Source: Octopus sinensis (lineage: Eukaryota). From it: a stretch of DNA of 64,000 nucleotides. The position numbers and the translations under genes were made by a program. The stretch's first letter is position 1. Each line of letters begins with the position of its first letter. The stretch spans positions 69,130,001-69,194,000 of the forward strand of contig NC_043001.1 of assembly GCF_006345805.1 (NCBI RefSeq), in the 5' to 3' direction. Below are positions 508-61,775 of this stretch, piece by piece. The notes beneath the pieces are model-generated. The model was not told the DNA's origin, did no database searches, and saw nothing but the letters and a program-made list of their open reading frames with translations.

Positions 508-693
508 CGACGACGACGATGACGATAATCTCAAAATTGTTTCGTATCTGTTCTACAACCGCTGTATTTCAGAGACAGAAAAACGATCAAATTTCCTGGA
601 ATCTTTGAAGGCCGATACCAACAGTTGCTTAATTTTTATATGCTTTAAGTCTTGTGACTGTCATTCACTATGATTTTATTATTCTGTCTCCTA

Positions 694-755
694 TGATTGA
701 TCGATTGATTCTAGTTTCAGCTCATGAGCTGTGGCCATGCTGGGGCACCGCCATT
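694..755 (-). mobile_element. Extremely 5'-truncated copy (3' tail only) of the CR1/L2-group LINE
   Basis: Reverse complement aatggcggtgccccagcatggccacagctcatgagctgaaactagaatcaatcgatcaatca matches the LINE 3' end at 36199-36261 almost exactly. Confidence 0.9.
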
Positions 756-1437: not shown

Positions 1438-1615
1438 TTAGATCGCTAGCCACTACACATTCTTTATTTTATGTCCCTGTTTCTTTTTGTGTTCATTTCT
1501 TTGGAAGAGCGTAGGTTCGAAACGGTAAAGACTTTTTCAATTCCCGTGTTTAAACTAATACATCTGTTTGTTGTCTACAGTACCTGTCTTTTGTATTCTT
1601 TTGTGAAATCTCCCT
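1438..1615 (+). mobile_element. Short repeat family A (Penelope-like-element-derived by inference) with degenerate HHR-like motif at 1496-1530
   Basis: Homologous to 4654-4765 (-) and 61488-61664 (-). Motif ttt-CTTTGGA-a-gagc-gtag-gttc-GAAA-cggt-aaag; ends in (TA)n. Confidence 0.7.
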
Positions 1616-1628
1616 ATATATATGTATA

Positions 1629-3576: not shown

Positions 3577-3764
3577 CATACATAGTATCTCCTATTCCAA
3601 TAATTAAGATATTTGAAAAAGTTTTGCCTATTTATTGCTGAAGGATGATATCTAACATTATGTACACACAATACACACACGGTAACACAGAATCACGCAA
3701 ACATACATTCCAAATCATCCATCAGAATATATACATACACACACACACATACACACACACACAT

Positions 3765-3839
<75 letters not shown>

Positions 3840-4290
3840 TATAATTATTAAAACATGTAGTAAACAAACACAACAACATATACCAAATAGAGAGACGAAC
3901 GAAAAACACAGAAGGTCACACAACTCCCCTTCAGTTATCGGCCGAATAGTCGCGCGCAATTTTAGCCATTATCGATAATATTCTTCCACTCTGGAGGCAC
4001 CTGGAAAAGACTTGCTAGGAATGGGACCCAAACATAACAAAACAAAACGGAATGGGCTCCAGGCGAGAACGTTAGTCAAAGGACGAGGGACAAAGCAACA
4101 AACAGTATAAATACTTAGGGCCACACGAAGACAACAATTCAAATGATAATAATTCATATACAACAAAAAAGCCTTAGCGCCGCAAAACAAGACGTAAATG
4201 GTTGAAGCGATGGAGAAATGAAAACCTGCTTTAAAGGAATATACACGGGAGGGGGAGTAGCATTTGTATCGTATTCTTTTATTCTTATAT

Positions 4291-4460
4291 TTGATTCAGT
4301 TATTTTATTGTGGCCATGCAAGAGCACCGCTTTTAGTCAAACGAATCGACCCCAGGACTTATTCTTTGTTTGGCTAGAATTTATTCTACCGGACACTTTT
4401 GCCGAACCGCTAAGTTAGGGGTACGTAAATACAGAAACACTAGCATACACACACACACAC
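4291..4460 (-). mobile_element. tRNA-derived SINE family 1, 3' half
   Basis: Antisense match to the 3' half of the full copy at 30541-30951 (gccgaaccgctaagtta, tggccatgc..gagcaccgc). Confidence 0.85.
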
Positions 4461-4477
4461 ATATATATATATACATA

Positions 4478-4960
4478 GTCACAGAAGTGGGTGGGTGTTA
4501 AGTAGCTTGCTTACCAACCACATGGTTCCGTGTCCAATCCCACTGCGGGGCACCTTGGGTAAATGTCTTCTATTTTAGCATCGGGTCGACCAAAGCCTTG
4601 TGAGTGGGTTTGGTAGACGGAAATTGAAAGAAGCCCGCCGTGTATATATATATAGGGAGAATTGACAAATAACAAAAGAGGTAGACATGTAGTGTAGACA
4701 ACAAACAGATGTATTAGTTTAACTCTCGGAAAGTGAAAAAGTCTTCAAAGTTTCGAGCCTACGCTATGTTTGTGTGGCTGTGTTTGCCCCCTACCATCGC
4801 TTGACAAGAGATGTCATGTCCCCGTAACTTAACAATTCGGTGAAAGACCGATAGAATAAGTACTAGGTCGATATGGAATAAGTCGTGTGGTTCATTTGTT
4901 CGATTTAAAGGCGGTGCTCCATGGAAGTACTCAAATGACTGAATCAAGTAAAAGAATATA
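4478..4960 (+). mobile_element. SINE family 1, interrupted in its central (TA)n by a family A fragment
   Basis: Head and central domain 4478-4650; 3' half resumes at 4766 and ends in tail ggcggtgctcc..aaatgactgaatcaagtaaaag. Confidence 0.85.
4654..4765 (-). mobile_element. Family A fragment (3' half of the HHR-like motif plus tail)
   Basis: agggagaatt...gtttcgagcctacgct, homologous to 61488-61664 and antisense to 1438-1615. Confidence 0.8.
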
Positions 4961-5077
4961 GGAATTAGAATATATATATATATATATATATATTTACGTA
5001 TGCACATGAGCATGCATGTGTATATATGTATGCGTATGTATATATATGTATATATATATATGTGTGTGTGTATATAT

Positions 5078-11370: not shown

Positions 11371-12499
11371 TATATTTATTTAGCTATTGCACATTAGTCC
11401 AAACAATTAAACATAATTTCTTCTACACGGAACATAATACTGCACGAAGAAGGTTGCGAAACAGCCGTTAACCTAAGGATTTCACGTAGTTAAGTAAATA
11501 TATGGTCAATTCTTATAAAGTCTGACATTTATGGTGTATATGCTCGTTATGAAATAAGTTCATCGACCTAATTGGTCATATAATGTAAAGATTATTTAGT
11601 CATTAGTTATTCGAATTATATCCCCTTGTGGTGTTTGTGTGCCTTATTTGATTAAAAATACGACAAATACAGAAACACACTTATATTCCGTTCCGCAAAT
11701 TTCAGGAAAAAAAATTGCATGGCAAAAGAACTGAAAAACTTCATATAGTATGGCGAAATGAAATAACAAAGATATTGAATGTCATAGTTCTTACGTATTT
11801 GTCAACACGAATGTTTTACCCATGCGTGTGATTTTATATGTATAAGTAGGTGCGTGTAAAAATATATACACACGTATGTGTATATATATATTGCATATCA
11901 TTGCCTATGTCTATGTATGTCTGCAGCAGGCAGAATTGAAATATATCCTATTATATTTCGCTATACTAATTTACACAACTTGTGGGAGGCTATACATACG
12001 AAAGTCGGGGTTACTGACCCGAAACATTAATATAAAAATGTATAATTTCTTTCATTCTAACAAGTACACACACGTACAGACACCCACACCCACACCTAAA
12101 CATATACATACATTCATACATGCATGCATACATACAAGCACACACACACGCACACACATACGTGCACACACAAACACACAGAGAGACACAAACACGCACA
12201 CACACATATGTATATATATATATATATATACGTACATGTTCTTCGAAAGTTTGTCTTCACAAATTGCTTTTATCATACCAAATGGCCACCTCACAAATTT
12301 CACCCCTCACCGTTCCTAATATACATAATCTCGTCATACAATTATATATGTTCATAACAATATATTTTGTGTATGACTGTATAAACATATATACGCACAT
12401 ATATATGTACACGCAATAAGTACGCACGTGTATGCACATACATAATGTATGCGTGAATATATGTAATTGCGTGTGTACATATATATGCATATATGTGCG

Positions 12500-12555
<56 letters not shown>

Positions 12556-12624
12556 TATATATAGATATAGATATATGTATATATATATACATACATATGT
12601 ATATATATGTATATATATGTATAC

Positions 12625-12693
<69 letters not shown>

Positions 12694-13084
12694 CATACAT
12701 ATGTATATATATACATATGTATATATATGTGTGTGTATATATGTGTATGTGTGTATGTATGTATGCATGTATGCGTCCATCAGTGCGTATTTGCGTATTT
12801 ACCGCAGAACAAATTTGCTTACCTGAAAGTACAACTAATATGACATAAAAACACTTATCAATATACAGAAATACACACACGCATAGAGATTGACGATCGC
12901 GGTCACATATACACACACAAGCGCACAGATGCACACGCATCATAGATCTCACGGATATGGTGTGTATGTGCATGTAATATATTTATTCTTTTGCTAGTGA
13001 TTGTACACTGACACACAAGCACATACACGAACATTATAATTATATATGTATATATGAAAATATATATGTATGTATATGCATATG

Positions 13085-13278: not shown

Positions 13279-13383
<105 letters not shown>

Positions 13384-13435
13384 ATATAAATGCGTTGATT
13401 TAAAGGACGCATACATACATACATATATTATATTA

Positions 13436-13482
<47 letters not shown>

Positions 13483-16400
13483 TCACACACACACACACAC
13501 ATATATACATATATATATTCGTCTATTAAATGAGCTGTATTTCGTGCTTAAATACCATATCACTTGCAGATCTTTATTTTAAATTGCGTTCGTTTCATCA
13601 TGAATATTTCAAATAAAATATAAAACAACAGTCCATAATTCCTATGTAATGGTGCGGTATGATGCTTCTTTTATTATATTGTCTCTACTGATTTGTACAA
13701 CTATTTGTTTTGGCTCATGTAGTCTATAAATCTCTTATATCATACAGATTTTTAGTTATTTTCACTACATCCTGTGTTATTTAGATGATACTTGTTATTG
13801 CTTTCGCTGTCGTCGTCAATCCGATGATGATGTTATTTTATTTCACAATTATTCTTATTGAAAATGGACACAATTCTTGTTATGTTACAGACGCTTGAGT
13901 TTTGATTGTTTATTGAAGCTTTTGTCTCCTTAGATCAGACATCATCAAACATTGTTTCAGTATATGTGCAGGCGTCCAAACGACCAGAAGTGGCTGTCTC
14001 GGTTCTTTTAGTTTTCTACTTCCATTAAGATTGCGCACATCGGAGAACCGCACTACAAACTTCTTGTATACTGATAAATCTTATGGTGTCCAATACATCA
14101 CTTTCAAAATGTTGCAATCGTCCTATTAGCCCATCTTATTTCTGCACGTTCACCAGTTTTGTAACTGGCCTCTCGACGGAAATAGTCAATATGGGCTCAG
14201 TCGTATCGTTATAATTTTTGTTCACAGTCACTTATTGAGTAAAAAGTTGTGTAGATTTCAGAGTTTGTGTGTCTGCATATCCATATATTGTTTTCTGAGA
14301 TAGTTTAGTTATATACATTAGGATGTTTGTGTCATCGCGAAGTGTTTAAAGGTTAAATATGGTGTGTTAATAATCTCTGCTTTTGATATTTTTTTCTCAT
14401 CTTAGTATTTTTATTTGAACTTTCGACAGTTTAAAGCGCTCGATGTTACGCTACTTTGTTTAGTTTTTAATTTATTACGGTATATTTTAGAGAGTTGACA
14501 GGATGCAAGCTGGTACACATAGAAGACACATATATCCTGATAAATATAATATATTCTTTGAACTCTATTGTAGTCACTACTTGGCGCACAAATGAGGGAA
14601 CTGTGACTGCCCTGTTTATTCGTTGCTTGATGTGATTTACTGCCTTCTATGTGAACTGTGCAGTTTTTGATTTATTTTATGTTCTCTGGTATTGATAGTT
14701 AAAAGAGGGACAGTGGACTTGGTAGACCCTGTTTTAAGTCTGTTGTGAAACAGGTTTCTTGGTATTTTATGTTGAACTTGAGTATTTTGCTGCTATGTAT
14801 GGCAAACAGTGATAAAATGTGAATAGACTCTCTGTAAAAGCCTGGGTGTATTATTTGCCCTAGTTTAGTAGTTTGTCAAGGTAAATGTCGAAACAGTTGT
14901 GCAGATACTGCAGAGTAATTGAATATATGCCTACCGTAGCCTTTTGTGTAATTGCATAGTAGGATGGATTTACGCTATTCAGTTACATTTAAAGTTAGAA
15001 TAATGACGAGGTAAACTTCTCTTTTCATTTTTTTTTGGCTGATGATATAAGGATGTGTAATAGACTCTAATCCTTGTTCTTATGTTCATCACAGTACAAA
15101 GTCAACTCAGAAAGAGAGGTGATAATAAACTAGAATTTGAAAATCAATATATAATGATTAAATGTCAAAATGCTTCACTTCATCGACAGGAAATATTTTT
15201 CTTATATATCATCAAGAACAAATGTGCATATATTCCTACGTGCATCTGTGCGATTATCACGACCATTTGACGAGTGTTCATTAATCTGTATTAACTCCTT
15301 TGATATTCTAACTTATGATAGCTTTAATCTCTGAGTATTGAACCCAAACACCCCTGCTCAAACTGATTTCCCAGGAGATATAATTCGATTTATGCATTCG
15401 CCTTGAATCGGATATTACACACTATTACAAGGCACACAAATATACAGACACATTCACGTACACACATGCACTCATTTATTCACGTACATACATATACACA
15501 TACATACGTACGTCCGTACGTTCGTCCATCCATCCATCCATCCATCCATCCATCCATACGTACATACATACATGCATACGTGCAAGCTTTCCTTTATTTT
15601 AGATTTCATAAAAGTGGGAAAAGTCAAAATAAATCTGCCAGATGTATAGCAATTTTGCAATTGGGTAGTAGGTAGTAGATGTTAGACATTTAACCAATGA
15701 GATTTACTAATACTTCTACATTTTCTAGTTGTAAACACAAAGCCAGTTTGGTGATTTGATTGGACATATTTTATTATCTTCATACACTATGTTGAGTATA
15801 CTTTTATGTTCTATCTAAATATGATAATGTGTGCCTAGTATACAACACATAACATAATATTACTCACCGCCAGTAGACATAAGTTAATCTCTATCAAACG
15901 CTATTAATGATGTAAATAGGAAACTAAATGGAGGGCTAAAACCAGAAAACTGGTACAGATTAAAAGAAATAATCACTTATCTATTGAACCTCACTGTATG
16001 TATGCATTACTTGCACACTACATATTTTGTACGGACGAACATTCTAAACATTTAGATACAAGCATACTCTCTGCTGGTATCTTTCACCTATCACTTTTAA
16101 CTTAAAGCTTACCATGTAATATAGCGAGCGAGGTTTTCTTTACCGTATTGAAGAGTAAAGCATAGAATATACTCTTCGAAGATAGGCCATCTTAGAATCG
16201 CCTTTATATTTCTTTATTTTCGTTTTACTATTTAAAATATACGCTAATATTTTGGCTTATTAAAAGTTCAAATGATTCATACGGTTATCACGAGAATATT
16301 TGTGAAAATGTGCATTTTCAAACATATTTTAATATGTATTAAACAAAACATACAATTTATTATGTAATCAATAAATAGTTGTTTAGAATTCTAAAATGAA

Positions 16401-30540: not shown

Positions 30541-30951
30541 GGCGCAGGAGTGGCTGTGTGGTAAGTAACTTGCTTACCAAGCACATGGTTCCGGGTTCAG
30601 TCCCACTGAATGGCACCTTGGGCAAGTGTCTTCTATTATAGCCTCGGGCCGACCAAAGACTTGTGAGTGGATTTGGTAGACGGAAACTGAAAGAATCTCG
30701 TCGTATATATGTATATATATATATGTGCGTGTGTGTTTGTGTGTCTGCGTTTGTCCCCCCAACATCGCTTGACAACCGATACTGGTGTGTTTACGTCCCC
30801 GTAACTTAGCGTTTCGACAAAAGAGCCCGATAGAATATGTACTGGGCTTACAAAGAATAAGTCCCGGGGCGAGTTGCTCGATTAAAGGTGGTGCTCCACC
30901 ATGGCAGCAGTCAAATGACTGAAACAAGTAAAATAGTAAAGAGTAAAGAGT
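30541..30951 (+). mobile_element. Full-length tRNA-derived SINE family 1
   Basis: A box tggctgtgtggt, B box ggttcagtccc; conserved central domain (gggcaagtgtcttct..gatttggtagacggaaactgaaagaa; Nin/Deu-like from memory, unverified); internal microsatellite; LINE-like tail; (gtaaaga)n end. Confidence 0.92.
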
Positions 30952-31297
30952 AATATATATATATATAATTGAAGAAATGACGGATTGAAAGTGTTATCAT
31001 GCAGACAGCAAATATCGGGATAAGACACGTGCAGAGTAAGTGAGAGAGATAAAAATTTTGGACCAAAACAAATGGGGAAATCCGAGTTGAAAACAGAATG
31101 AAACCTTTATGCAATGAAATTTTTGGCATTTCTTTTTTCGGCATATAAATTCAATTAGAAGCCCGAGTGAACTGTTTTGACAAGCTGGCTTGCAAATTGT
31201 TTAATATATATTTTTGAATGCTGTTCTGCAGTTTTTATGTGAGATTGTATACATGCATACATACATACATACATACAAACATACATACATACATACA

Positions 31298-32039: not shown

Positions 32040-33054
32040 CATACATATATATATATATAGATACATATATACATATAGATATATATGTATGTGCATTTAC
32101 CCTTTTGTGTAAGTGTGTATTTAATTGTGTGTGGGGGCTTGCGTGAATGTATAAACATGAAATGTAATATACGCATTCAGTATACACTTTCACATTCACT
32201 CACGTACATAGAAACACGCCCACGCATGCACATTCATATTCATACGCCGCCACACACAAACATATACAAATTGTCACACATACACACGTTCACTCATACA
32301 TTTGCACACATGCACACACGCACACTCGCACTTGTAGCCTGAGACACACAGTAATAAATCACCAATGAACAGCAAACCGTTGTGAAAATATTGCAGCAGA
32401 GTGTTCAGTATAATTATTGACGGAAGTTAATGAATGTTTCCAGTTCTCTAATGGACATTTAATGCTAACAAAGTTGTGTCAAACTGGGCCATAAAATTGT
32501 TGATTTATTTCAATATTCGGTTCACCCAGTACAAAAGTGGTGGTCAATGCAACATTGTTATTATAGTAATCGAAATGGAGTAGATACGGCGCAGCACGTT
32601 ACTACACATCTATTATGTTCACGCAGAATTTAACTTAGAGACACTTATATAACAAATGCCTCCATATTGCCGTACACATTGATACAAATAGGCAGAGGCA
32701 CACACAAACACACACACACATGCTCTCGAGCAAACAGACACGCTCACGCACACACAAAGACACGCACGCACGCACACACGCGCAAACACACACAAACATA
32801 TATATACCATGAATGCGTATTTGTATATATTTTGCATAGAGTTGGCATTCCAAAATTGATATATTAAGAATATCGGCGCCTTCTGACAATACAGAAATAA
32901 GCTTGTGTGTGTGTGTGTGTGTGTGCGTTGTTTCTCCATGTGCACATGTGCGTTTATTTGTGCGACGGTTTTTGTGTATATGTGTGTATGTGAGAATAAT
33001 TATATGTCAATACTATATATAAACTTAACTATATATTTATACTCACACACACGT

Positions 33055-33375
33055 GGCTGTGGGGTTAGAAGCTTGCTTCCCAACCACATGGTTCTGAGTT
33101 CAGTCCCACTGCTGGCACCTTAGGCAAGTGTTTCCTACTATAGCCTCGGACCGACCAAACCTTGTGAGTGGATTAAGTAGATGGTAACTGAAATACGCCT
33201 GTCGTATATATGTGTGTGTGTGTATTTGTGTCTGTGTTTGTCTCCCACCATCACTTGGCAAACGATCTTAACGTGTTTACGTCCCCGTAACTTAGCGGTT
33301 CGGCAAAGAGGGACCGATAGTATATGTACTAGGCTTACAATAAGTCCTGGGGTTGATTTGTACGACTGAAACAAA
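33055..33375 (+). mobile_element. SINE family 1 copy directly abutting the LINE 5' truncation point
   Basis: Head, central domain and 3' half present; the tail stem-loop region is absent. Confidence 0.85.
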
Positions 33376-33383
33376 TAATGAAA

Positions 33384-36261
33384 CAGGACTGAAACAGGAA
33401 AGAAAGGAGTCATGGAGGTGTTGCTATGTACATCCGTGAGGACCTCACACCCCAGGTCCTCTTGTCATACTCAAACTCGGTGTGTGACACACTAATTGTA
33501 CATATTAGGCAACTTGATGTAGTTGTGTGTGCTACATATCGCCCTCCAGATGCCCCAAGCCATGTGGGCAAGTTTGAAGACTGCCTTATAAAAATAGAAG
33601 AAATTCTAACCACATTAGAACAACACATAGGTGTGCTTCTTATGGGAGACTTCAATCTGCCCAATGTCAGATGGCCCGGGGGCCTTTCTCTCCCAGGAAT
33701 GACAAGATGTGAACGAGGACAGGCGAGGTCCCTCCTGAACCTCATCAACACCCTGTACATGGAGCAGGTAATACTCCAACCAACCAGGGCAGGTAACACA
33801 CTGGATCTCTGCTTCACAAATGACATGGATCTCATCCATAATGTGAAAGTGACACCGAAACTACTCTCGGATCACAACATGATAGAGCTGACCATGTACG
33901 GGCCAAAAGAGAGCACGGACATGCAGCCTACAAGAAACCCTCAAAATCTTTCCAGATTGAACTACCATAAGGCAAACTGGAAACAAATTGAGAATGAGAT
34001 CCTCAAACAAAACTGGCCTAAATGTCTCTCCTCGCCAGACATCGACGTGAAACTTCAACAATTCATGTCTGTAATGCAAGCCATATGCTACAAATGTGTC
34101 CCAGAGAGAAAGGCCACTGTACACAAGAACAAAATCCCCAGAGAGAGGAAAATTTTAATGAGACGGCGTACGAAATTTTCAAATCGCCTAAACAAACAGA
34201 TTGAAAGCAGTGAAAAGTCCCACCTAAAAATAAAACTGTTGGAAATCGAAAAATGTCTGCAACTCTCCCATGAAAAAGAAAGAGCAGACAAAGAAGCCTG
34301 GGCTATAGAAAACATAAAATCTAACCCCAGAGCTTTCTACAGGTATGCCAAAGAAACAGCTACAGTGCACTGTAGAATAGGGCCACTCCTCGAAAAGGAT
34401 GGCACACTTACAGGAAAACCAATGAGGGTAAGTGAAATACTGAATGAGCAATTCAAGAGTGTTTTCACTCCACCCCTTGGGCATCTCCAAATCACCAATC
34501 CAACTGACTTTTTTACCACTGCAGATATAAAATCAGAGACGGCGACGATAGATTACATCGATATAAAGGAAGACGATGTAACCAAGGCTATAGATGAAAT
34601 GAAAACAGACAAAGCTACTGGCCCCGATGGATTCCCGGCAATCCTCCTAAAAGCATGTAAGAGAGTCCTAGCAAGACCACTGCAGTTCCTCTTTCAGAGC
34701 TTCCTTGCAGCTGGCAAACTTCCAGGAAAACTGAAGGAAGGTAAAATATGCCCCATTCATAAAGGAGGTAGCAGAGCGGAAGCCAAGAACTATAGACCTA
34801 TCTCTCTGACCTCACACATCAGCAAGGTCATGGAACGAATAGTCAGAAGGAAGCTGATCACCTTCCTTGAAGAGAATGACTTGCTGCCCGACACCCAACA
34901 TGGTTTCCGACCAGGGAGAAGCTGTTTAACTCAGCTCCTACAACACTATGACTGGGTGCTGAAACGGCTGCTCAACCAATCAAATGTGGAAGTGATATAT
35001 CTCGACTTTGCAAAGGCCTTTGATAAAGTCGATCATGGAATGATATGTCACAAACTGCGTGATCTCAACATAGTTGGAAAACTGGGAGAATGGCTTCATG
35101 ACTTTCTGAAGGATAGAAGTCAGGTGGTAGTAGCCAATGGGGCCACCTCCATTAACACACAAATAGTGAGCGGTGTTCCGCAGGGCACTGTTCTGGGACC
35201 ACTACTGTTCATAATGGCCCTCTCAGACATGCCCTCAGCCACGCAGAGAGCCACGATCACAAGTTATGCAGATGATACAAAAGTTTCACAGGCAATACAG
35301 AACCCTGAGGACACTAAACACCTGCAATGTGAGCTGGACGAAATATACAAGTGGGCTGAAAAGAATAGCATGCAGTTCAATGCTGGAAAGTTTCAAGCTT
35401 TATACTATCAGCATGCAAAACTGAATGCAATACCCAATGAATACACTGGACCCGGAGGGATTGCAATCCCAGAGGCACAATCAGTGCGTGACCTGGGTAT
35501 TCACATGAATGATGACGCGACCTTTCATGTACATGTTGCTAAACTGACAATGAAATGTAGACGGCTGGCTGGATGGATTCTTAGAACCTTTAGAACAAGA
35601 GAACAAGAAACCATGATGGTCCTCTGGAAGACACTTGTCCTAAGCCACTTTGACTATTGCTCTCAGCTATGGTCACCATCCAGTGTCAAGTTGATCACAG
35701 AACTTGAGGCGATCCAACGAAGCTACACGATGAAGATAGCCTCTATGCAGAATGTAAGCTACTGGGAAAGACTCAAGAGATTAAAATTATATTCCCTGGA
35801 GCGTAGGCGGGAAAGATATGCCATAATATACATCTGGAAGATCCTGGAGGGAAGTGTCCTGAACTTTGGCATCGAGAGTTACACAAATGCCAGAACTGGG
35901 CGCCACTGCGTGGTGCCTAGGACTCCAAGCCTGCCATCAAGATGTAGGACAAGATTCTGTGATAGCCTGGGCTTCCGAGGCCCACAGCTCTTCAATATCC
36001 TCCCGAAGAACCTGAGAGACCTGCATGGGGTGGATACAGATGTCTTTAAAATGAAGCTGGATCTCTTCCTGTCAGGTGTCCCAGATGAACCAACTTCACG
36101 GCAGGAGGGGCAGATGAGGGCAGCTGCATCGAACTCTCTCATGCACCAAATAGCAGTTGCTAGAAAGCCTCCATGAAGTGAAACCAAGTAGCAACACCAA
36201 ATGGCGGTGCCCCAGCATGGCCACAGCTCATAAGCTGAAACTAGAATCAATCAATCAATCA
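33384..36261 (+). mobile_element. 5'-truncated CR1/L2-group non-LTR retrotransposon
   Basis: Begins inside the APE domain (..KKRSHGGVAMYI); about 85-nt 3' UTR with stem-loops and (AATC)n tail, then (TA)n. Confidence 0.93.
33426..36176 (+). CDS. LINE ORF2: partial APE endonuclease plus reverse transcriptase, 916 aa uninterrupted
   Basis: APE motifs YRPP, GDFN, LDLCFT, SDH. RT motifs KATGPDG, NYRPISL, QHGFRPGRSCLTQL, YLDFAKAFDKV, GVPQGTVLGPLLF, YADD, RDLGI. Confidence 0.96.
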   Translation: MYIREDLTPQVLLSYSNSVCDTLIVHIRQLDVVVCATYRPPDAPSHVGKFEDCLIKIEEILTTLEQHIGVLLMGDFNLPNVRWPGGLSLPGMTRCERGQARSLLNLINTLYMEQVILQPTRAGNTLDLCFTNDMDLIHNVKVTPKLLSDHNMIELTMYGPKESTDMQPTRNPQNLSRLNYHKANWKQIENEILKQNWPKCLSSPDIDVKLQQFMSVMQAICYKCVPERKATVHKNKIPRERKILMRRRTKFSNRLNKQIESSEKSHLKIKLLEIEKCLQLSHEKERADKEAWAIENIKSNPRAFYRYAKETATVHCRIGPLLEKDGTLTGKPMRVSEILNEQFKSVFTPPLGHLQITNPTDFFTTADIKSETATIDYIDIKEDDVTKAIDEMKTDKATGPDGFPAILLKACKRVLARPLQFLFQSFLAAGKLPGKLKEGKICPIHKGGSRAEAKNYRPISLTSHISKVMERIVRRKLITFLEENDLLPDTQHGFRPGRSCLTQLLQHYDWVLKRLLNQSNVEVIYLDFAKAFDKVDHGMICHKLRDLNIVGKLGEWLHDFLKDRSQVVVANGATSINTQIVSGVPQGTVLGPLLFIMALSDMPSATQRATITSYADDTKVSQAIQNPEDTKHLQCELDEIYKWAEKNSMQFNAGKFQALYYQHAKLNAIPNEYTGPGGIAIPEAQSVRDLGIHMNDDATFHVHVAKLTMKCRRLAGWILRTFRTREQETMMVLWKTLVLSHFDYCSQLWSPSSVKLITELEAIQRSYTMKIASMQNVSYWERLKRLKLYSLERRRERYAIIYIWKILEGSVLNFGIESYTNARTGRHCVVPRTPSLPSRCRTRFCDSLGFRGPQLFNILPKNLRDLHGVDTDVFKMKLDLFLSGVPDEPTSRQEGQMRAAASNSLMHQIAVARKPP

Positions 36262-36339
<78 letters not shown>

Positions 36340-38221: not shown

Positions 38222-38597
38222 TTACTCTTTTACTTGTTTCAGTGGCCATGCTGGAGTACCGCCTTTAGTTGAGCAAATCGACACCAGGACTTCTTCTTTG
38301 TAAGCCTAATACTTATTCTATCGGGCTCTTTTGCCGAACCGCTAAGTTACGGTAACGTAAACACACCAGCATCGGTTATCAAGCGATGTTGGGGAGAAAA
38401 ACAGACATACAAACATACACCCCCCACACACACATATATACATATATACATATATACGACGGACTTCTTTCAGTTTCCGTCTGCCAAATCCACTCACAAG
38501 GCCTTGGTCGACCTGAGGCTATAGTAGAAGAAACTTGCCCAAAGTGCCACGCAGTGGAACTGAACCCGGAACCATGTGGTTGGTAAACAAGCTACTT
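38222..38597 (-). mobile_element. SINE family 1 body; its head continues at 40630-40668 beyond a 2-kb insertion
   Basis: Antisense tail, body and B box up to ggtaaacaagctactt; resumes ggtaaacaagctacttgccacacggccactcctacgcc at 40630. Confidence 0.9.
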
Positions 38598-40629
38598 TAT
38601 TTCATAAATTTGTCATATAGACAGTACAAAGAGCTTTGCGGGCTGGACAAATACATTAATGAATGAAAATGAAATATAATGAATAAATGAGAGACGAAAC
38701 CCAACACCCGCCGATTGGATTTTTCTCGAAAACATATTTTCTTTCTTTTTTTAAAAATCAATATGAAGTTTCGAACCTCTTACAAGGAGAAGGCACTAAA
38801 ACCTCTTACTTAACATGTTTTCTTTTTTTTTTCTTTCTTAAAGCACAAAATTGAGGTTATAAACCACTACAAAATAATCCAATAAGATGAGGTTTCAAAC
38901 CCTGTAACGAGGGTCTTTCACCTCCTACTCTTCGATATATCCATCGATATATTCATCATTATCTTCAATGCTGCTTGAGTTCCTGTATCCCGCCATTTCC
39001 CATGCCTCACTCATGTAGGACATGTAAGTCATGTAAGGGCCACCCCGCCATATGCGACAATCCTCCCCAAATCCTTTAAGCCTTTCGCACAAGGGAAACC
39101 TTATGACCTCCACAGCTATCTGCGGAGGCCATTCGGGATCCCGTGTGAAGGGCATATCTACTGATTCTTTATGTTCTACTATTTTTTCCACCTCCTCGCC
39201 CTTGTAGAAAAATATAATTAATTGATCATCTTTAAGGGTGGGGGTGGTTTCTTCCACCGTCGGTGGCACAACTTCGGGACATCATCTCCCCGCTGAGATG
39301 ACCCGTTCTTCTTCCTTCTTTTTTTTCTTTTCTTCCTGGCTTCGGGAGAGTGGAGCTCTTCCGCTTTGTCCGGAGACTCTCCCCCGCCTTCCGAAGCCTT
39401 CGTAGTTGCCCGCCTTCTTCCTTTTTAATCATTTTTGAGTTGAGGAGGCTGAAGCCTCCTCGACCACATACACCTCTTCCTTTGACCGGGTAGGGGAGGT
39501 GGCATCTAGTGACTGTTCCAGGACCTTACCCTGGTCCTGGGGGCAGTTCCTTTTAATGTGGCCTGGCTGCAGGCACGAGTGACACTTTGGGGGCCGTCCC
39601 TCAAGTATAACCGGATACCTGCAGCCAGCCATTTTCAAGAAGTCTGGAAAAACCAGTTCTGTTGCGGCCGAAGGGGTCCACAGGGTCAAAATCGCTTTTG
39701 ACCCTTCCCAATCGACCGCCGGCAATACTCTTACATTTAAGAGCCTGGGCCTGCCATCCCCCAGTCCCCGTCGGATGGTATCTTCAATCCAATCCGCTTC
39801 GGTGCCCGGGGGGAGCCCACATACCCAGGCTCGTATTAATTTTCTTCCACAATATGACGGGAGAAACAGAATTTCCTTGCCTTCTAAAGGCTGACTCGCA
39901 AACTGGCGAGCCTTTTCCCCGTTGTCAAACAGCAACCATACGGTTGCATGTTTGACACAACGGGATATATATTTTACAGAGGACAAATGTTCTTTAAGTT
40001 CATTTTTTATGACTTGTTTTAGGAAGACGGTGATGAAATTAAGAACTTTAGAATACGTTCTAAGTACCATCGTCTTCTCCTCCATATCTTTTAACCATTG
40101 CTTAGGCGGGTTAATTTCCCACTCTAAGACAGAGTTTTTCTTTTTAAGTTCCTTCTCTGCCATGTCAAAAAACAGTTCAAAAGTAGTTCAAAAGACAGTC
40201 TGCCAAAAAATTAAACCGAATAAAAATAAAACAAAATAAAAGAGGAGGAGAGGAAACTGAAATTAAAGTAAGGAAAAGAATGAACCAAAATTTAGAAAGA
40301 AAGAAAAACTAGAAGGGAAAAGTAAAAGAAAAACCTCACAAATAGCACAGACAGGGAATCCTTTGTATAATACTCCAAAAAGGTAATCCAAAAGGTAATC
40401 CAAATGGCTTATTCTTATTTTTCTGGCGAGATACGCCCACTAGAATTCACAAGAATAATTTTCAAAAAAATTCTCAATTCACCGTTACGGTGACGAGAAC
40501 TCAGTATTTTGCTCACTATAGCGAGCCATAATTGACAATATTTCTTTTTGTTCTCTTTTTTTCTATTCGCGGAGCCGAAACTCACATCTGCTCACTGTAA
40601 CAGTCCAGACCAACTAGTATTGCATTCTG
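38598..40629 (-). mobile_element. ORF1-only (HAL1-like) L1/Tx1-type element, 2032 bp, 16-bp TSD
   Basis: TSD ggtaaacaagctactt at 38582-38597 and 40630-40645. About 465-bp 5' UTR, gag-like ORF, about 330-bp 3' UTR ending in gaaataa; no RT sequence. Confidence 0.82.
39429..40163 (-). CDS. Gag-like ORF1 with CCHC zinc knuckle; probably continues by frameshifts to 38925
   Basis: CHSCLQPGHIKRNC fits CX2CX4HX4C; upstream RRM-like region. Overlapping same-strand ORFs 39232-39432 and 38925-39269 suggest a frameshifted C-terminus. Confidence 0.8.
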   Translation of the reverse strand: MAEKELKKKNSVLEWEINPPKQWLKDMEEKTMVLRTYSKVLNFITVFLKQVIKNELKEHLSSVKYISRCVKHATVWLLFDNGEKARQFASQPLEGKEILFLPSYCGRKLIRAWVCGLPPGTEADWIEDTIRRGLGDGRPRLLNVRVLPAVDWEGSKAILTLWTPSAATELVFPDFLKMAGCRYPVILEGRPPKCHSCLQPGHIKRNCPQDQGKVLEQSLDATSPTRSKEEVYVVEEASASSTQK

Positions 40630-42429: not shown

Positions 42430-42534
42430 AGTATTTGACTTAAGAAGTTAGTTCAATCTTCATCGACTAAAACGTTCAGGGTGGTAATCCAGCATAGCCA
42501 TGATCTAATGACTGAAATAAGTATATATTTATTA

Positions 42535-43854: not shown

Positions 43855-44290
43855 AGGCACAAGCGTATCGGTGTGGGAAGAAGTCTGCTTCCCAACCACA
43901 CGGTTCCTGGTTCAGTCCCACTCCATGGGAAATTGGCTGGTAGCGGTCTCTTATAGCCTCAAGCCGATCATAGTCTTGTGAATGGATTTAGTAGACGGAA
44001 AGTGAAAGAAGCTAGTCGTATGTATGTATGTGTGTGTGTATCTATGTATGCGTGTATGTGTGTTTGTGTGTCTTTGAGTCTCCGTTTGTCACCCACCACT
44101 GCTTGACAACTGGTGTTTGTGTGTTTACGCCAGCGTAACCTAGCGGTTCGGCAAATACAAAATCAATAGAAGAAATGCCAGGCTTTAGATTATCAGTACT
44201 AGGATCGATTTGTTCGACTAAAAATTTGCAAGGCAATGCCCCAGCATGGCCTAAGTTTAATGACTGTAAGAAGTAAAATATAAAAGTTAA
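43855..44290 (+). mobile_element. Full-length diverged SINE family 1
   Basis: Head, B box ggttcagtccc, central domain, tail ggcaatgccccagcatggcc. Confidence 0.85.
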
Positions 44291-44422
44291 GTTATTTATA
44301 TAAATACGCATGAATGTGTGTATGCGTATTTGTGTTTCCAATTGTCTGCGCATTTATGTCAGTGTATGTGTGTGTATTTTTGTGAATGTTTGTGTATTTT
44401 AACCAGGTTAATTCGTTTTCAG

Positions 44423-61261: not shown

Positions 61262-61457
61262 TCTTTTTTTACATGCATCAGTCATTTGACTGCGGACATG
61301 CTGGAACACCGTCATTACTCGAAAAAATCGACCTGAAGACTTTGTAACCCTAGTAGTTATTCTATCGGTCACTTTTGCCGAACCGCTATCTTACGGGGGT
61401 GTAAATACATCAACAACGGTTGTCAAGCGATGGTGGGGGACAAACACAGACACGCAA

Positions 61458-61488
<31 letters not shown>

Positions 61489-61775
61489 GGGAGAATTCAC
61501 AAAAAGAAATACAAAAGACGAAGACAGGTGGTGTAGACAACAAACACATGTAATAGTATAACGCTCGGAAAGTGAAAAAGTCTTCTTTAACGTTTCGAGC
61601 CTACGGTCTTCCACAGAAAGAGACAAGGAGAGAAAATAAAGAATGTGTAGGGGCCAGCGATCTACAACGAGCTTCTTTCATTTTCCTTCTACCAAAATCC
61701 ACAGATAAGGCTTCGGTCAGCCCGAGGCTATAGTAGAAGACATTTACCGAAGGCACCACGGAGAACCATCTGTGT
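61262..61775 (-). mobile_element. SINE family 1 interrupted in its central (TA)n by a family A element
   Basis: 3' half 61262-61470; central domain resumes about 61665-61775. Confidence 0.82.
61488..61664 (-). mobile_element. Family A element with HHR-like motif at 61584-61621
   Basis: Minus strand: tcttt-CTGTGGA-a-gacc-gtag-gctc-GAAA-cg-tt-aaaga. Confidence 0.8.

What the first reader, a model, noticed from the sequence alone, without database searches (positions are those of the whole stretch)
36199..36261. LINE and SINE share a bipartite 3' RNA structure with compensatory changes
Seen: LINE end GGCGGTGCCCCAGCATGGCCA-cagct-cata-agctg-AAAC versus SINE end (30887-30925) GGTGGTGCTCCACCATGGCAG-cagtc-aaat-gactg-AAAC, with similar tails at about 4910, 38240 (minus), 44232 and 61275 (minus). 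The second hairpin swaps ct/ag for tc/ga and keeps 5 bp plus a 4-nt loop. Known: stringent-type LINEs (L2/CR1) mobilise SINEs carrying their 3' stem-loop. Inference: this LINE family is the driver of the dominant SINE here, and the covariation identifies the RT recognition element.
Basis: partly seen in the sequence, partly recalled or inferred. Interest (0 to 1): 0.7.

Follow-up and report, generated by a model that had tools for sequence, protein, structure and literature searches.

The report
Octopus LINE and SINE share tail
A jumping gene (LINE) and the commonest short parasite repeat (SINE) in this octopus-type DNA end in the same roughly 42-base, two-hairpin RNA signal; this is a new example of a well-known way in which SINEs borrow a LINE's copying machinery, and the LINE copy in this window is probably a relative of the real helper, not the helper itself.

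Summary
The LINE copy (33386-36262, intact 916-codon endonuclease plus reverse transcriptase reading frame) ends in a 40-nt module at 36202-36241. It consists of hairpin 1 (UGGC.GUGC-CCCA-GCAU.GCCA), hairpin 2 (CAGCU-CAUA-AGCUG) and AAAC, followed by TAGA(ATCA)n. Five to seven copies of the window's main SINE (tRNA-like head, CORE-like body) carry the same module.

The 20-nt box occurs 7 times within 3 mismatches, against 0 expected. Nine LINE lineages (57-88% protein identity, including two from Argonauta) keep both hairpins. 97% of cells pair, and 4 of 13 pairs show changes on both sides.

- The tail came from this LINE family, but other subfamilies match the SINE better. L105 has an identical box (37/43 overall against 33-34/43). 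L102 and L105 share the SINE's octamer end-repeat, whereas the window LINE has (ATCA)n.
- The LINE copy is young and the SINE copies are 6-26% diverged.
- Recognition by the reverse transcriptase is inferred by analogy, not shown.

This is a new member of a known kind (stringent LINE/SINE tail sharing, as for CR1- or L2-type LINEs with CORE-SINEs). Interest is modest.

The parts
33386..36262 (+). 5'-truncated copy of a CR1-like LINE, lacking about 350 nt compared with the full-length relative L001
   Evidence: blastn and tblastn against L001/P0001: 89.8% nucleotide identity over 2862 nt, starting at L001 nt 352
33426..36176 (+). Intact 916-codon reading frame with an apurinic-type endonuclease (N-terminally cut) and a reverse transcriptase
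   Evidence: ORF list. Pfam RVT_1 1.4e-30 and Exo_endo_phos_2 1.8e-12. 1387 homologues, the closest including Argonauta hians
36202..36223 (+). LINE hairpin 1: UGGC.GUGC-CCCA-GCAU.GCCA (4+4 bp, a G/G 1x1 mismatch, CCCA loop)
   Evidence: RNAfold, RNAalifold, pair counts
36224..36237 (+). LINE hairpin 2: CAGCU-CAUA-AGCUG
   Evidence: RNAfold, RNAalifold, pair counts
36238..36261 (+). Invariant AAAC spacer followed by the subfamily-specific terminal repeat TAGA(ATCA)4
   Evidence: Sequence. AAAC is invariant in all 11 aligned tails and the repeats differ between lineages
693..755 (-). Tail-only, extremely 5'-truncated copy of the same LINE subfamily (hairpin 1, hairpin 2, AAAC, ATCA-type repeat)
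   Evidence: blastn 96.8% over 63 nt, covariance model 66 bits, sequence
30541..30957 (+). Near full-length SINE copy (tRNA-like head, CORE-like body, internal TA/TG microsatellite, tail). The tail module is at 30884-30925, followed by an AAGTAAAA..-type repeat
   Evidence: Sequence, blastn family, covariance model 37.9 bits
38206..38597 (-). SINE copy whose tail (38236-38266) keeps hairpin 1 (19/20 to the LINE box) but lacks hairpin 2 exactly. It ends in (AGTAAAAG)n
61267..61753 (-). SINE copy with the tail module at 61275-61316
43871..44301 (+). Older SINE copy (about 21% diverged) with the tail module at 44229-44270
4278..4433 (-). 3' part of a SINE copy with the tail module at 4293-4334 and an (AATAAAAG)-type end
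4482..4977 (+). SINE copy with the tail at about 4903-4945 (3-nt deletion in hairpin 1) and another small repeat inserted in its internal microsatellite
42440..42530 (+). 5'-truncated, decayed SINE tail
   Evidence: The covariance model gives only 6.6 bits
33053..33385 (+). SINE copy that lacks both hairpins (deletion between two GACT repeats) and abuts the 5' end of the LINE copy

Best explanation
The 40-nt stretch at 36202-36241 is the 3'-terminal module of an octopod LINE family of the CR1-like, stringent type. It has two adjacent hairpins, an invariant AAAC, and then a subfamily-specific microsatellite.

The dominant SINE of this genome (tRNA-like head, CORE-type body) acquired this module from a member of the same LINE family. 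The donor was most like the L105 and L102 subfamilies, not the subfamily of the copy in this window.

By analogy with the L2 and CR1 systems, the LINE's reverse transcriptase binds the hairpin module on the RNA. It then starts target-primed reverse transcription on the terminal repeat. A SINE transcript carrying the module would therefore be copied in trans.

Shown here:
- the shared sequence
- both hairpins, with covariation
- the direction of transfer, from LINE to SINE
- the better match of other subfamilies

Inferred: binding by the reverse transcriptase and mobilisation in trans.
For: 1. Element identity. The reading frame at 33426-36176 has endonuclease and reverse transcriptase domains. 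Its closest relatives include Argonauta hians.

2. Shared module. The box occurs 7 times against 0 expected. The covariance model finds 2 LINE tails and 5 SINE tails in the window.

3. Structure. RNAfold gives the same two hairpins in every lineage and in the SINE consensus (z = -3.2). RNAalifold predicts them independently. 97.2% of cells pair, against 21-50% when partners are slid. 4 of 13 pairs change on both sides. No shuffle out of 500 reached the observed covariation score.
- Hairpin 1, pair 1: U-A, C-G, G-C or G.U.
- Hairpin 1, pair 4: C-G, U.G or U-A.
- Hairpin 2, pairs 4-5: CU/AG, CC/GG or UC/GA.

4. Deeper conservation. Three LINEs at about 40% identity (L085-L087) carry hairpin 1's architecture at their 3' ends. 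In L085 and L086 the G/G mismatch is kept, and L086's outer arm GGU/ACC is the one seen in the Argonauta lineage L103. L087 has C/A at that position and its own outer arm. All three keep the NCCA loop and replace the inner stem by other base pairs.

5. Direction. The module is present in LINE lineages of both Octopus-type and Argonauta DNA. The Argonauta SINE with the same CORE body has a different tail. Homology between SINE and LINE starts at the box and does not extend upstream.

6. Partner subfamily. L105 has a box identical to the SINE consensus and matches at 37/43. L102 and L105 share the SINE's octamer end-repeats.

7. Precedent. In bivalves, CORE-SINEs share tails of 35-61 bp at 72-95% identity with CR1, CR1-Zenon or L2 LINEs (PMC11481361). 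Stringent LINE proteins recognise their own 3' tail RNA (PMC4176376, abstract).
Against: - No functional test was possible.
- The SINE consensus rests on only 6-8 old copies from one 64-kb window.
- L102 and L105 come from metagenome contigs of unknown species, so it is not shown that they live in the same genome as this SINE.
- No LINE found has the SINE's exact hairpin 2 (CAGUC/GACUG).
- One SINE copy lacks hairpin 2 and one lacks both hairpins. If those deletions arose in source genes, the hairpins would not be strictly required.
- 9 of 13 pairs never vary, so much of the support is sequence conservation rather than covariation.
- The CR1-like label rests on domain content, tail architecture and a C-terminal motif recalled from memory, not on a phylogeny.
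Confidence: 0.72

Rival explanations
1. One reading: the particular LINE subfamily present at 33386-36262 is itself the driver of the SINE. On this view, the differences in hairpin 2 between LINE and SINE are compensatory changes tolerated by that LINE's reverse transcriptase.
For: The window LINE is the only member of the family seen in this window and looks recently active. It has an intact 916-codon reading frame, and a second tail-only copy is 96.8% identical. It shares hairpin 1 (19/20), the hairpin 2 shape and AAAC with the SINE.
Against: Its terminal repeat (ATCA)n is absent from all SINE copies in the window, whereas L102 and L105 carry the SINE-type octamer. The local score of terminal repeats against the SINE is 4, compared with 14 for L102 and L105. 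L105 matches the module better (37/43 against 33-34/43). The SINE copies are 6-26% diverged while the LINE copy must be within a few percent of its source. In the eel L2 system the terminal repeat is needed as well as the stem-loop (Kajikawa and Okada 2002, from my own knowledge).
Confidence: 0.15
2. The shared tail is only a fossil of the SINE's birth. The SINE is now extinct or is moved by an unrelated LINE, and the tail module no longer matters for it.
For: All SINE copies in the window are old, at 6-26% from consensus. Two copies lack one or both hairpins. Octopod CORE-type SINEs do exchange tails: the Argonauta SINE has a different one.
Against: The tail was present in the founder of every subgroup seen here. 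The terminal repeats of SINE copies come in two variants that mirror two LINE subfamilies, AGTAAAAG as in L102 and AATAAAAG as in L105. This suggests continued dependence on the family, though a single G/A change could also explain it. Published O. vulgaris annotation reports joint recent SINE and LINE expansion, with CR1 among the recently active LINEs (PMC13282606).
Confidence: 0.1
3. The resemblance is a chance or compositional match and the hairpins are not functional.
For: Single-sequence folding z-scores are modest for several lineages, from -0.8 to -2.5.
Against: 0 matches are expected against 7 found. The 20-nt box is nearly invariant (0-3 changes) between LINE lineages that share only 57-70% protein identity. 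4 pairs covary, and slid controls collapse to 21-50% pairing.
Confidence: 0.01

Closest known systems
Stringent-type LINE/SINE pairs with a common 3' tail (tortoise Pol III SINE with CR1, Ohshima et al. 1996; eel UnaL2 with UnaSINE1, Kajikawa and Okada 2002; zebrafish ZfL2, PMC4176376)
   Same: A SINE with a tRNA-like head ends in about 40 nt copied from the 3' untranslated end of a LINE. The shared part contains a conserved stem-loop followed by short tandem repeats. Homology is confined to the tail.
   Different: There are two adjacent hairpins rather than one. Hairpin 1 has an invariant G/G mismatch and an NCCA loop, instead of the GGAUA loop of the eel L2. An invariant AAAC spacer follows. 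The LINE copy in the window and the SINE do not share the terminal repeat, while sister subfamilies do. No mobilisation assay exists for this system.
Mollusc CORE-SINEs partnered with CR1, CR1-Zenon or L2 LINEs in bivalves (PMC11481361; PMC4824008; PMC4758252)
   Same: Same phylum and same SINE superfamily (CORE-type body). The tail homology is of similar length and identity: 35-61 bp at 72-95% there, about 42 bp at 77-86% here. Both show mosaic evolution with tail exchange between related SINEs.
   Different: This is a cephalopod. The papers I could search name no LINE partner for the octopus SINEs.
Amniote CR1 3' end: a hairpin plus an octamer microsatellite (Suh and colleagues, from my own knowledge)
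   Same: A hairpin is followed by a microsatellite at the extreme 3' end. Several lineages here also use 8-nt units: AGTAAAAG, AATAAAAG and, approximately, a CATTAAAA-type unit in L103/L104.
   Different: The sequences are unrelated. The repeat unit length varies from 4 to 8 nt between sister subfamilies. There are two hairpins instead of one.
Octopus OR1/OR2 SINEs (Ohshima and Okada 1994), listed as CORE-SINEs
   Same: A tRNA-derived octopus SINE containing the CORE motif CCTTGGGCAAGT.
   Different: I could not obtain the published OR1/OR2 sequences, so identity with them is unverified. The two papers I read disagree on which of OR1 and OR2 is the CORE-SINE.

Membership tests
Stringent LINE/SINE pair sharing a 3' tail | The SINE's 3' end is homologous to the 3' end of a LINE in the same lineage | tested here: met
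   The box occurs 7 times against 0 expected. The covariance model hits 2 LINE and 5 SINE tails. The SINE consensus is 33-37/43 identical to the LINE tails.
Stringent LINE/SINE pair sharing a 3' tail | Homology is confined to the tail, and the SINE body is unrelated to the LINE | tested here: met
   Local alignments of five SINE bodies against the 200 nt upstream of the box in nine LINE lineages gave no score above z = 3.
Stringent LINE/SINE pair sharing a 3' tail | LINE and SINE end in the same terminal tandem repeat | tested here: not met
   Not met for the window LINE, which has (ATCA)n against the SINE's (AGTAAAAG)n. Met for the sister subfamilies L102 (AGTAAAAG) and L105 (AATAAAAG).
Stringent LINE/SINE pair sharing a 3' tail | A conserved stem-loop in the shared tail, supported by covariation | tested here: met
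   There are two hairpins. 97.2% of cells pair, 4 of 13 pairs change on both sides, and slid controls give 21-50%.
Stringent LINE/SINE pair sharing a 3' tail | The SINE head carries an RNA polymerase III (tRNA-type) promoter | tested here: inconclusive
   A-box-like TGGCTGTGTGG and B-box-like GGTTCAGTCCC are visible about 33 nt apart. ARAGORN and Rfam tRNA models give no hit, even at E <= 10.
Stringent LINE/SINE pair sharing a 3' tail | The LINE protein mobilises the SINE in trans through the tail | not testable with these tools
   This needs a retrotransposition or RNA-binding assay.
CR1-clade LINE | An ORF2 with an apurinic-type endonuclease followed by a reverse transcriptase | tested here: met
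   Pfam Exo_endo_phos_2 and RVT_1.
CR1-clade LINE | A 3' untranslated end with a hairpin followed by a microsatellite and no poly(A) | tested here: met
   This architecture is also general among the more distant relatives fetched, including an L2-type element, so it does not discriminate CR1 from L2.
CR1-clade LINE | Placement within CR1 in a reverse transcriptase phylogeny with reference elements | not tested
   No reference LINE set was available. Indirect points: a fish L2-type element (L072) is only about 25% identical, and the C-terminal motif LYSLERRRERY resembles the CR1 motif as I recall it.
CORE-SINE superfamily | The conserved CORE motif in the body, downstream of a tRNA-like head | tested here: inconclusive
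   CCTTGGGCAAGT is present in the consensus, and CCTTGGG is named as the conserved CORE sequence in PMC5786205. The body is 83-89% identical over about 90 nt to SINE copies in Argonauta. No CORE reference alignment was run.

The most novel reading that the evidence does not exclude
Hairpin 1, with its NCCA tetraloop (and its G/G mismatch, kept in two of the three distant LINEs examined), may be an ancient protein-recognition element. It may be shared by a whole CR1-like LINE lineage across phyla, seen here in LINEs at only about 40% protein identity whose relatives include crustacean and cnidarian proteins. In octopods the SINE may follow successive LINE subfamilies simply by changing its terminal microsatellite. 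That would make this a compact system for asking how stringent LINE reverse transcriptases read their RNA, and how SINEs switch helpers.
Probability: 0.3. Interest if true: 0.5.

Novelty: new member of a known kind. Interest (0 to 1): 0.3.

Why it matters
SINEs make up about 4-12% of octopus genomes (figures quoted) and have been linked to genome reshuffling and neural expression. None of the papers I could search says which LINE moves them. Tying the main SINE's tail to one CR1-like LINE family, with a defined 40-nt two-hairpin module, gives a concrete candidate helper and a short RNA element that can be mutated and tested. The principle itself has been textbook knowledge since 1996-2002, so the value is a specific annotation and an experimental handle, not a new mechanism.

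Tried and rejected
- Exact-pattern scans of the viral and prokaryotic genome collections for the box gave only chance hits in phage and bacterial contigs.
- A protein-based scan of viral contigs gave one irrelevant fragment.
- The 80 metagenome loci found with the LINE protein profile are only 22-49% identical and lack the module, both by fuzzy box search and by covariance model. They served as an outgroup only.
- A structural descriptor for hairpin 1 gave 7 plus-strand and 7 minus-strand hits in those loci, so there is no general enrichment. However, 2 of the plus-strand hits sit exactly at the 3' ends of two of the three LINEs at about 40% identity.
- The mantis-shrimp locus L107 has an ambiguous, probably decayed tail.
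- ARAGORN and Rfam found no tRNA or any other known RNA family in the SINE or in the LINE tail.
- MAFFT misaligned the distant hairpin 1 sequences, so I counted those pairs on an ungapped alignment in a script.
- I considered whether the 244-aa zinc-knuckle ORF at 39429-40163 is ORF1 of this LINE. It shows no similarity to the ORF1 of L085, and I dropped it.
- I looked for SINE-LINE homology upstream of the box, after MAFFT hinted at it for L105. It was not significant.
- No clear target-site duplications could be called, because most insertions lie in (TA)n microsatellites.
Full report
**What is there**

The window is AT-rich, microsatellite-laden animal DNA. The nearest relatives of its LINE protein include Argonauta hians, so it comes from an octopod cephalopod.

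At 33426-36176 (+) lies an uninterrupted 916-codon reading frame with an apurinic-type endonuclease (cut at its N-terminus) and a reverse transcriptase. Comparison with a full-length relative (L001: 1033 aa, 89.8% nucleotide identity) shows that the copy spans 33386-36262 and lacks about 350 nt at its 5' end.

After the stop codon comes a 25-nt spacer. A second, tail-only copy of the same 63 nt lies at 693-755 on the minus strand.

**The SINE**

A repeat of about 420 nt occurs about 11 times, whole or in part. Its parts are:
- a head with A-box-like and B-box-like motifs
- a body with the CORE motif CCTTGGGCAAGT
- an internal TA/TG microsatellite
- a 3' region ending in AAAGGCGGTGCTCCAGCATGGCC(A/G)CAGTCAAATGACTGAAAC, followed by AAGTAAAAGAGTAAAAG-type repeats

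ARAGORN and Rfam do not recognise the head as a tRNA. "tRNA-derived" therefore rests on the box motifs and on the literature on octopus SINEs.

**Check of the observation**

The 20-nt box occurs 7 times within 3 mismatches, against none in 100 shuffles. A covariance model built from the module finds the two LINE tails (about 66 bits each) and five SINE tails (20-38 bits), and nothing else below E = 0.1.

GGTGG and GGCAG are copy-specific changes (GGTGG at a CpG), and the GGTGG/CCACC pairing it seems to offer is not the family's structure.

**Structure**

Folding each tail alone gives the same picture:
- Hairpin 1 has a 3-4 bp outer stem, a G/G 1x1 mismatch, a 4-bp inner stem (GUGC/GCAU) and a CCCA, UCCA or ACCA loop.
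- Hairpin 2 follows immediately, with 5 bp and a loop of 3-6 nt.
- AAAC follows hairpin 2.

I fetched the 3' ends of eight further LINE lineages through the protein database. Their protein identities, by lineage, are listed here.
- Identity to the whole window protein: L001 88% in the alignment (87% by BLASTP), L002 64%, L003 63%, L004 57% (Argonauta).
- Identity to its C-terminal 297 aa: L102 70%, L103 60% (Argonauta), L104 64%, L105 63%.

All keep the module.

On the 11-row alignment A2, RNAalifold predicts exactly these two hairpins. Counting pairs gives:
- 97.2% of cells form standard pairs, against 21-50% when the 3' partners are slid by 1-3 columns.
- 4 of 13 pairs have changes on both sides.
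- The covariation score is 0.183, against 0.083 in shuffles, and no shuffle out of 500 reached it.

The informative pairs are:

| Pair | Variants seen |
|---|---|
| Hairpin 1, pair 1 | U-A, C-G, G-C, G.U |
| Hairpin 1, pair 4 | C-G, U.G, U-A |
| Hairpin 2, pair 4 | C-G in all LINEs, U-A in the SINE |
| Hairpin 2, pair 5 | U-A in the window group, C-G in five lineages and the SINE, C/C in two |

All six copies that retain hairpin 2 have the T and the A.

Two caveats apply. Nine pairs never vary, and the window, W754 and L001 rows represent one lineage. The number of independent events is about eight, not dozens.

**Deeper conservation of hairpin 1**

Three LINEs at about 40-48% protein identity (L085-L087) come from metagenome assemblies. 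Named relatives at that distance are crustacean and cnidarian proteins. These three LINEs do not match the covariance model. Their 3' ends nevertheless fold into the same kind of hairpin:
- L086: GGU.G.GACA-ACCA-UGUC.G.ACC
- L085: an inner stem GUGG-ACCA-CCAC between G/G mismatches
- L087: AGG.C.GGCCA-CCCA-UGGUC.A.CCU

Compared with the octopod hairpin, every inner-stem pair of L086 is replaced by another standard pair, three of the four through changes on both sides. The NCCA loop is kept in all three. L085 and L086 keep the G/G mismatch, and L086's outer arm GGU/ACC is the one seen in the Argonauta lineage L103. L087 has C/A at that position and its own outer arm.

The descriptor I wrote finds only 7 hits per strand in 340 kb of unrelated LINE loci. 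Two of those lie within 30 nt of the stop codon of these LINEs. By my estimate about 0.007 such hits would be expected by chance in those positions. I selected these hairpins by eye and by pattern, so this is a lead rather than a proof.

More distant relatives (24-32% identity) have other hairpins and other repeats. They include a fish L2-type tail with the classical GGAUAA loop. A hairpin followed by a microsatellite is therefore the general plan of this broad LINE group.

**Who gave the tail to whom**

The module is present in LINE lineages of both Octopus-type and Argonauta DNA, and in altered form beyond molluscs. The Argonauta SINE shares the CORE body (83-89% identity over about 90 nt in seven copies) but ends differently, in ...GTAAAGCAGGAGAGTCATTTACATTTTACA. 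SINE-LINE similarity begins at the box and does not extend upstream. The tail therefore moved from the LINE to the SINE, and octopod CORE-type SINEs have exchanged tails. This matches the mosaic evolution described for bivalve SINEs.

**Is this LINE the driver?**

The evidence says it is the family, not this subfamily.

| LINE tail | Identity to SINE consensus, flank through AAAC | Terminal repeat | Local score of terminal repeat against the SINE |
|---|---|---|---|
| L105 | 37/43, 20-nt box identical including the UCCA loop | GGTT(AAAAGAAT)n | 14 |
| L102 | 33/43 | AGAGTAAAAGAGTA | 14 |
| Window LINE (two copies) | 33-34/43 | TAGA(ATCA)n | 4 |

- The SINE copies end in AAGTAAAAGAGTAAAAGAGTA, or in AAGAATAAAAGAATA-type repeats in two copies (4293 and 4903). 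The first is the unit of L102 and the second is that of L105. No SINE copy here has (ATCA)n.
- No LINE found has the SINE's exact hairpin 2.
- Ages differ. The eight to nine SINE copies are 6-26% from a crude consensus. The LINE copy keeps 2.75 kb of open reading frame and its sister tail differs at 2 of 63 positions, so it must be within a few percent of its source.

With one 64-kb window this is a small sample. Even so, it points to an older or different subfamily as the helper when these SINE copies were made.

**Mechanism**

Shown:
- a strongly conserved two-hairpin RNA module at the extreme 3' end of the LINE, more conserved than the protein
- the same module in the SINE

Inferred from the eel and zebrafish L2 work and from CR1 (PMC4176376 abstract; Kajikawa and Okada 2002 and Suh's CR1 work from my own knowledge):
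- the LINE protein binds this module in cis on its own RNA
- it starts target-primed reverse transcription on the terminal repeat
- it does the same in trans for SINE RNA

Two features suggest sequence-specific contacts rather than mere stem stability: the invariance of the G/G mismatch among the octopod tails and two of the three distant LINEs, and of the NCCA loop and the AAAC spacer throughout.

Two SINE copies with deletions warn that the requirement is untested. The copy at 38236-38266 has hairpin 2 removed exactly. The copy at 33053-33385 has both hairpins removed between GACT repeats.

**Comparison with what is known, and novelty**

This is the classical stringent LINE/SINE relationship. 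In molluscs it is already documented for bivalve CORE-SINEs with CR1, CR1-Zenon and L2 partners, with tails of 35-61 bp at 72-95% identity.

I ran searches for octopus and cephalopod SINE/LINE partnership terms and read eight of the papers they returned, including the 2022 octopus LINE paper, the 2026 O. vulgaris repeat annotation and a 2026 review. None of these names the LINE partner of the octopus SINE. Repbase entries could not be checked.

I therefore rate it a new member of a known kind. The CR1-like label is provisional. It rests on:
- domain content
- the tail plan
- a C-terminal motif recalled from memory
- the fact that CR1 is the only one of the recently active octopus LINE groups listed that seems to fit these features, judged from my own knowledge of those clades

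No phylogeny was run.

**Verdict**

The assignment of the SINE's tail to this LINE family is supported. The claim that this LINE copy's subfamily is the driver is not supported. Recognition by the reverse transcriptase is plausible but untested. Interest is modest, at 0.3.

Noticed in passing
window 4654-4763 (+), 61477-61605 (+), 1508-1626 (-): A separate repeat of about 115 nt (GGGAGAATTGACAAATAACAAAAGAGG...TTTCGAGCCTACG) sits inside the internal (TA)n microsatellite of two different SINE copies, in opposite orientations relative to the SINE. A third copy lies next to another (TA)n tract. It may be a small non-autonomous element that targets TA repeats (81-85% identity).
   Followed up: partly
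window 39429-40163 (-), with possible continuation to about 38950: An intact 244-aa reading frame with a CCHC zinc knuckle (CHSCLQPGHIKRNC) follows a long AT-rich leader and looks like a gag/ORF1-type protein of another retroelement. It has no similarity to the ORF1 of the related LINE L085.
   Followed up: partly
window 693-755 (-): A LINE insertion consists of nothing but the 63-nt tail (both hairpins, AAAC and the repeat) and starts 2-3 nt upstream of hairpin 1. The extreme 5' truncation happens to coincide with the start of SINE-LINE homology.
   Followed up: partly
window 38236-38266 (-) and 33330-33385 (+): One SINE copy has hairpin 2 deleted exactly (GGCCA|CTGAAAC). Another has both hairpins removed between two GACT repeats. 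Whether these are post-insertion deletions or source-gene variants is unknown.
   Followed up: no
L004 about 20-350, 12300-12850, 13300-13860, 14980-15900; L103 1539-1629, 16201-16293: Argonauta hians carries a SINE with the same CORE body (83-89% identity over about 90 nt) but a different 3' part, ending in ...GTAAAGCAGGAGAGTCATTTACATTTTACA. This suggests a different LINE partner and tail exchange among octopod SINEs.
   Followed up: partly
3' flanks of window 36262, 30957, 38206, 4977; L102 1775: LINE and SINE copies alike are very often followed directly by (TA)n tracts, and the SINE carries an internal TA/TG microsatellite. Either the endonuclease prefers TA repeats or the element tails seed them. 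Target-site duplications could not be called for this reason.
   Followed up: no
L105 733-737; L085 4020-4047; L086 4233-4260: The position of hairpin 1 relative to the stop codon varies. It lies 25 nt downstream in the window LINE, immediately after the stop in L105, and inside the end of the reading frame in the LINEs at about 40% identity.
   Followed up: no
L072 about 3640-3790: One of the distant metagenome LINE loci (about 25% identity) ends in the classical fish L2-type tail (GTAAGTCGCTCTGGATAAGAGCGTCTGCTAAATGACTTAAATGTAAATG). It is a useful outgroup showing that the octopod LINE is not of that L2 type.
   Followed up: no
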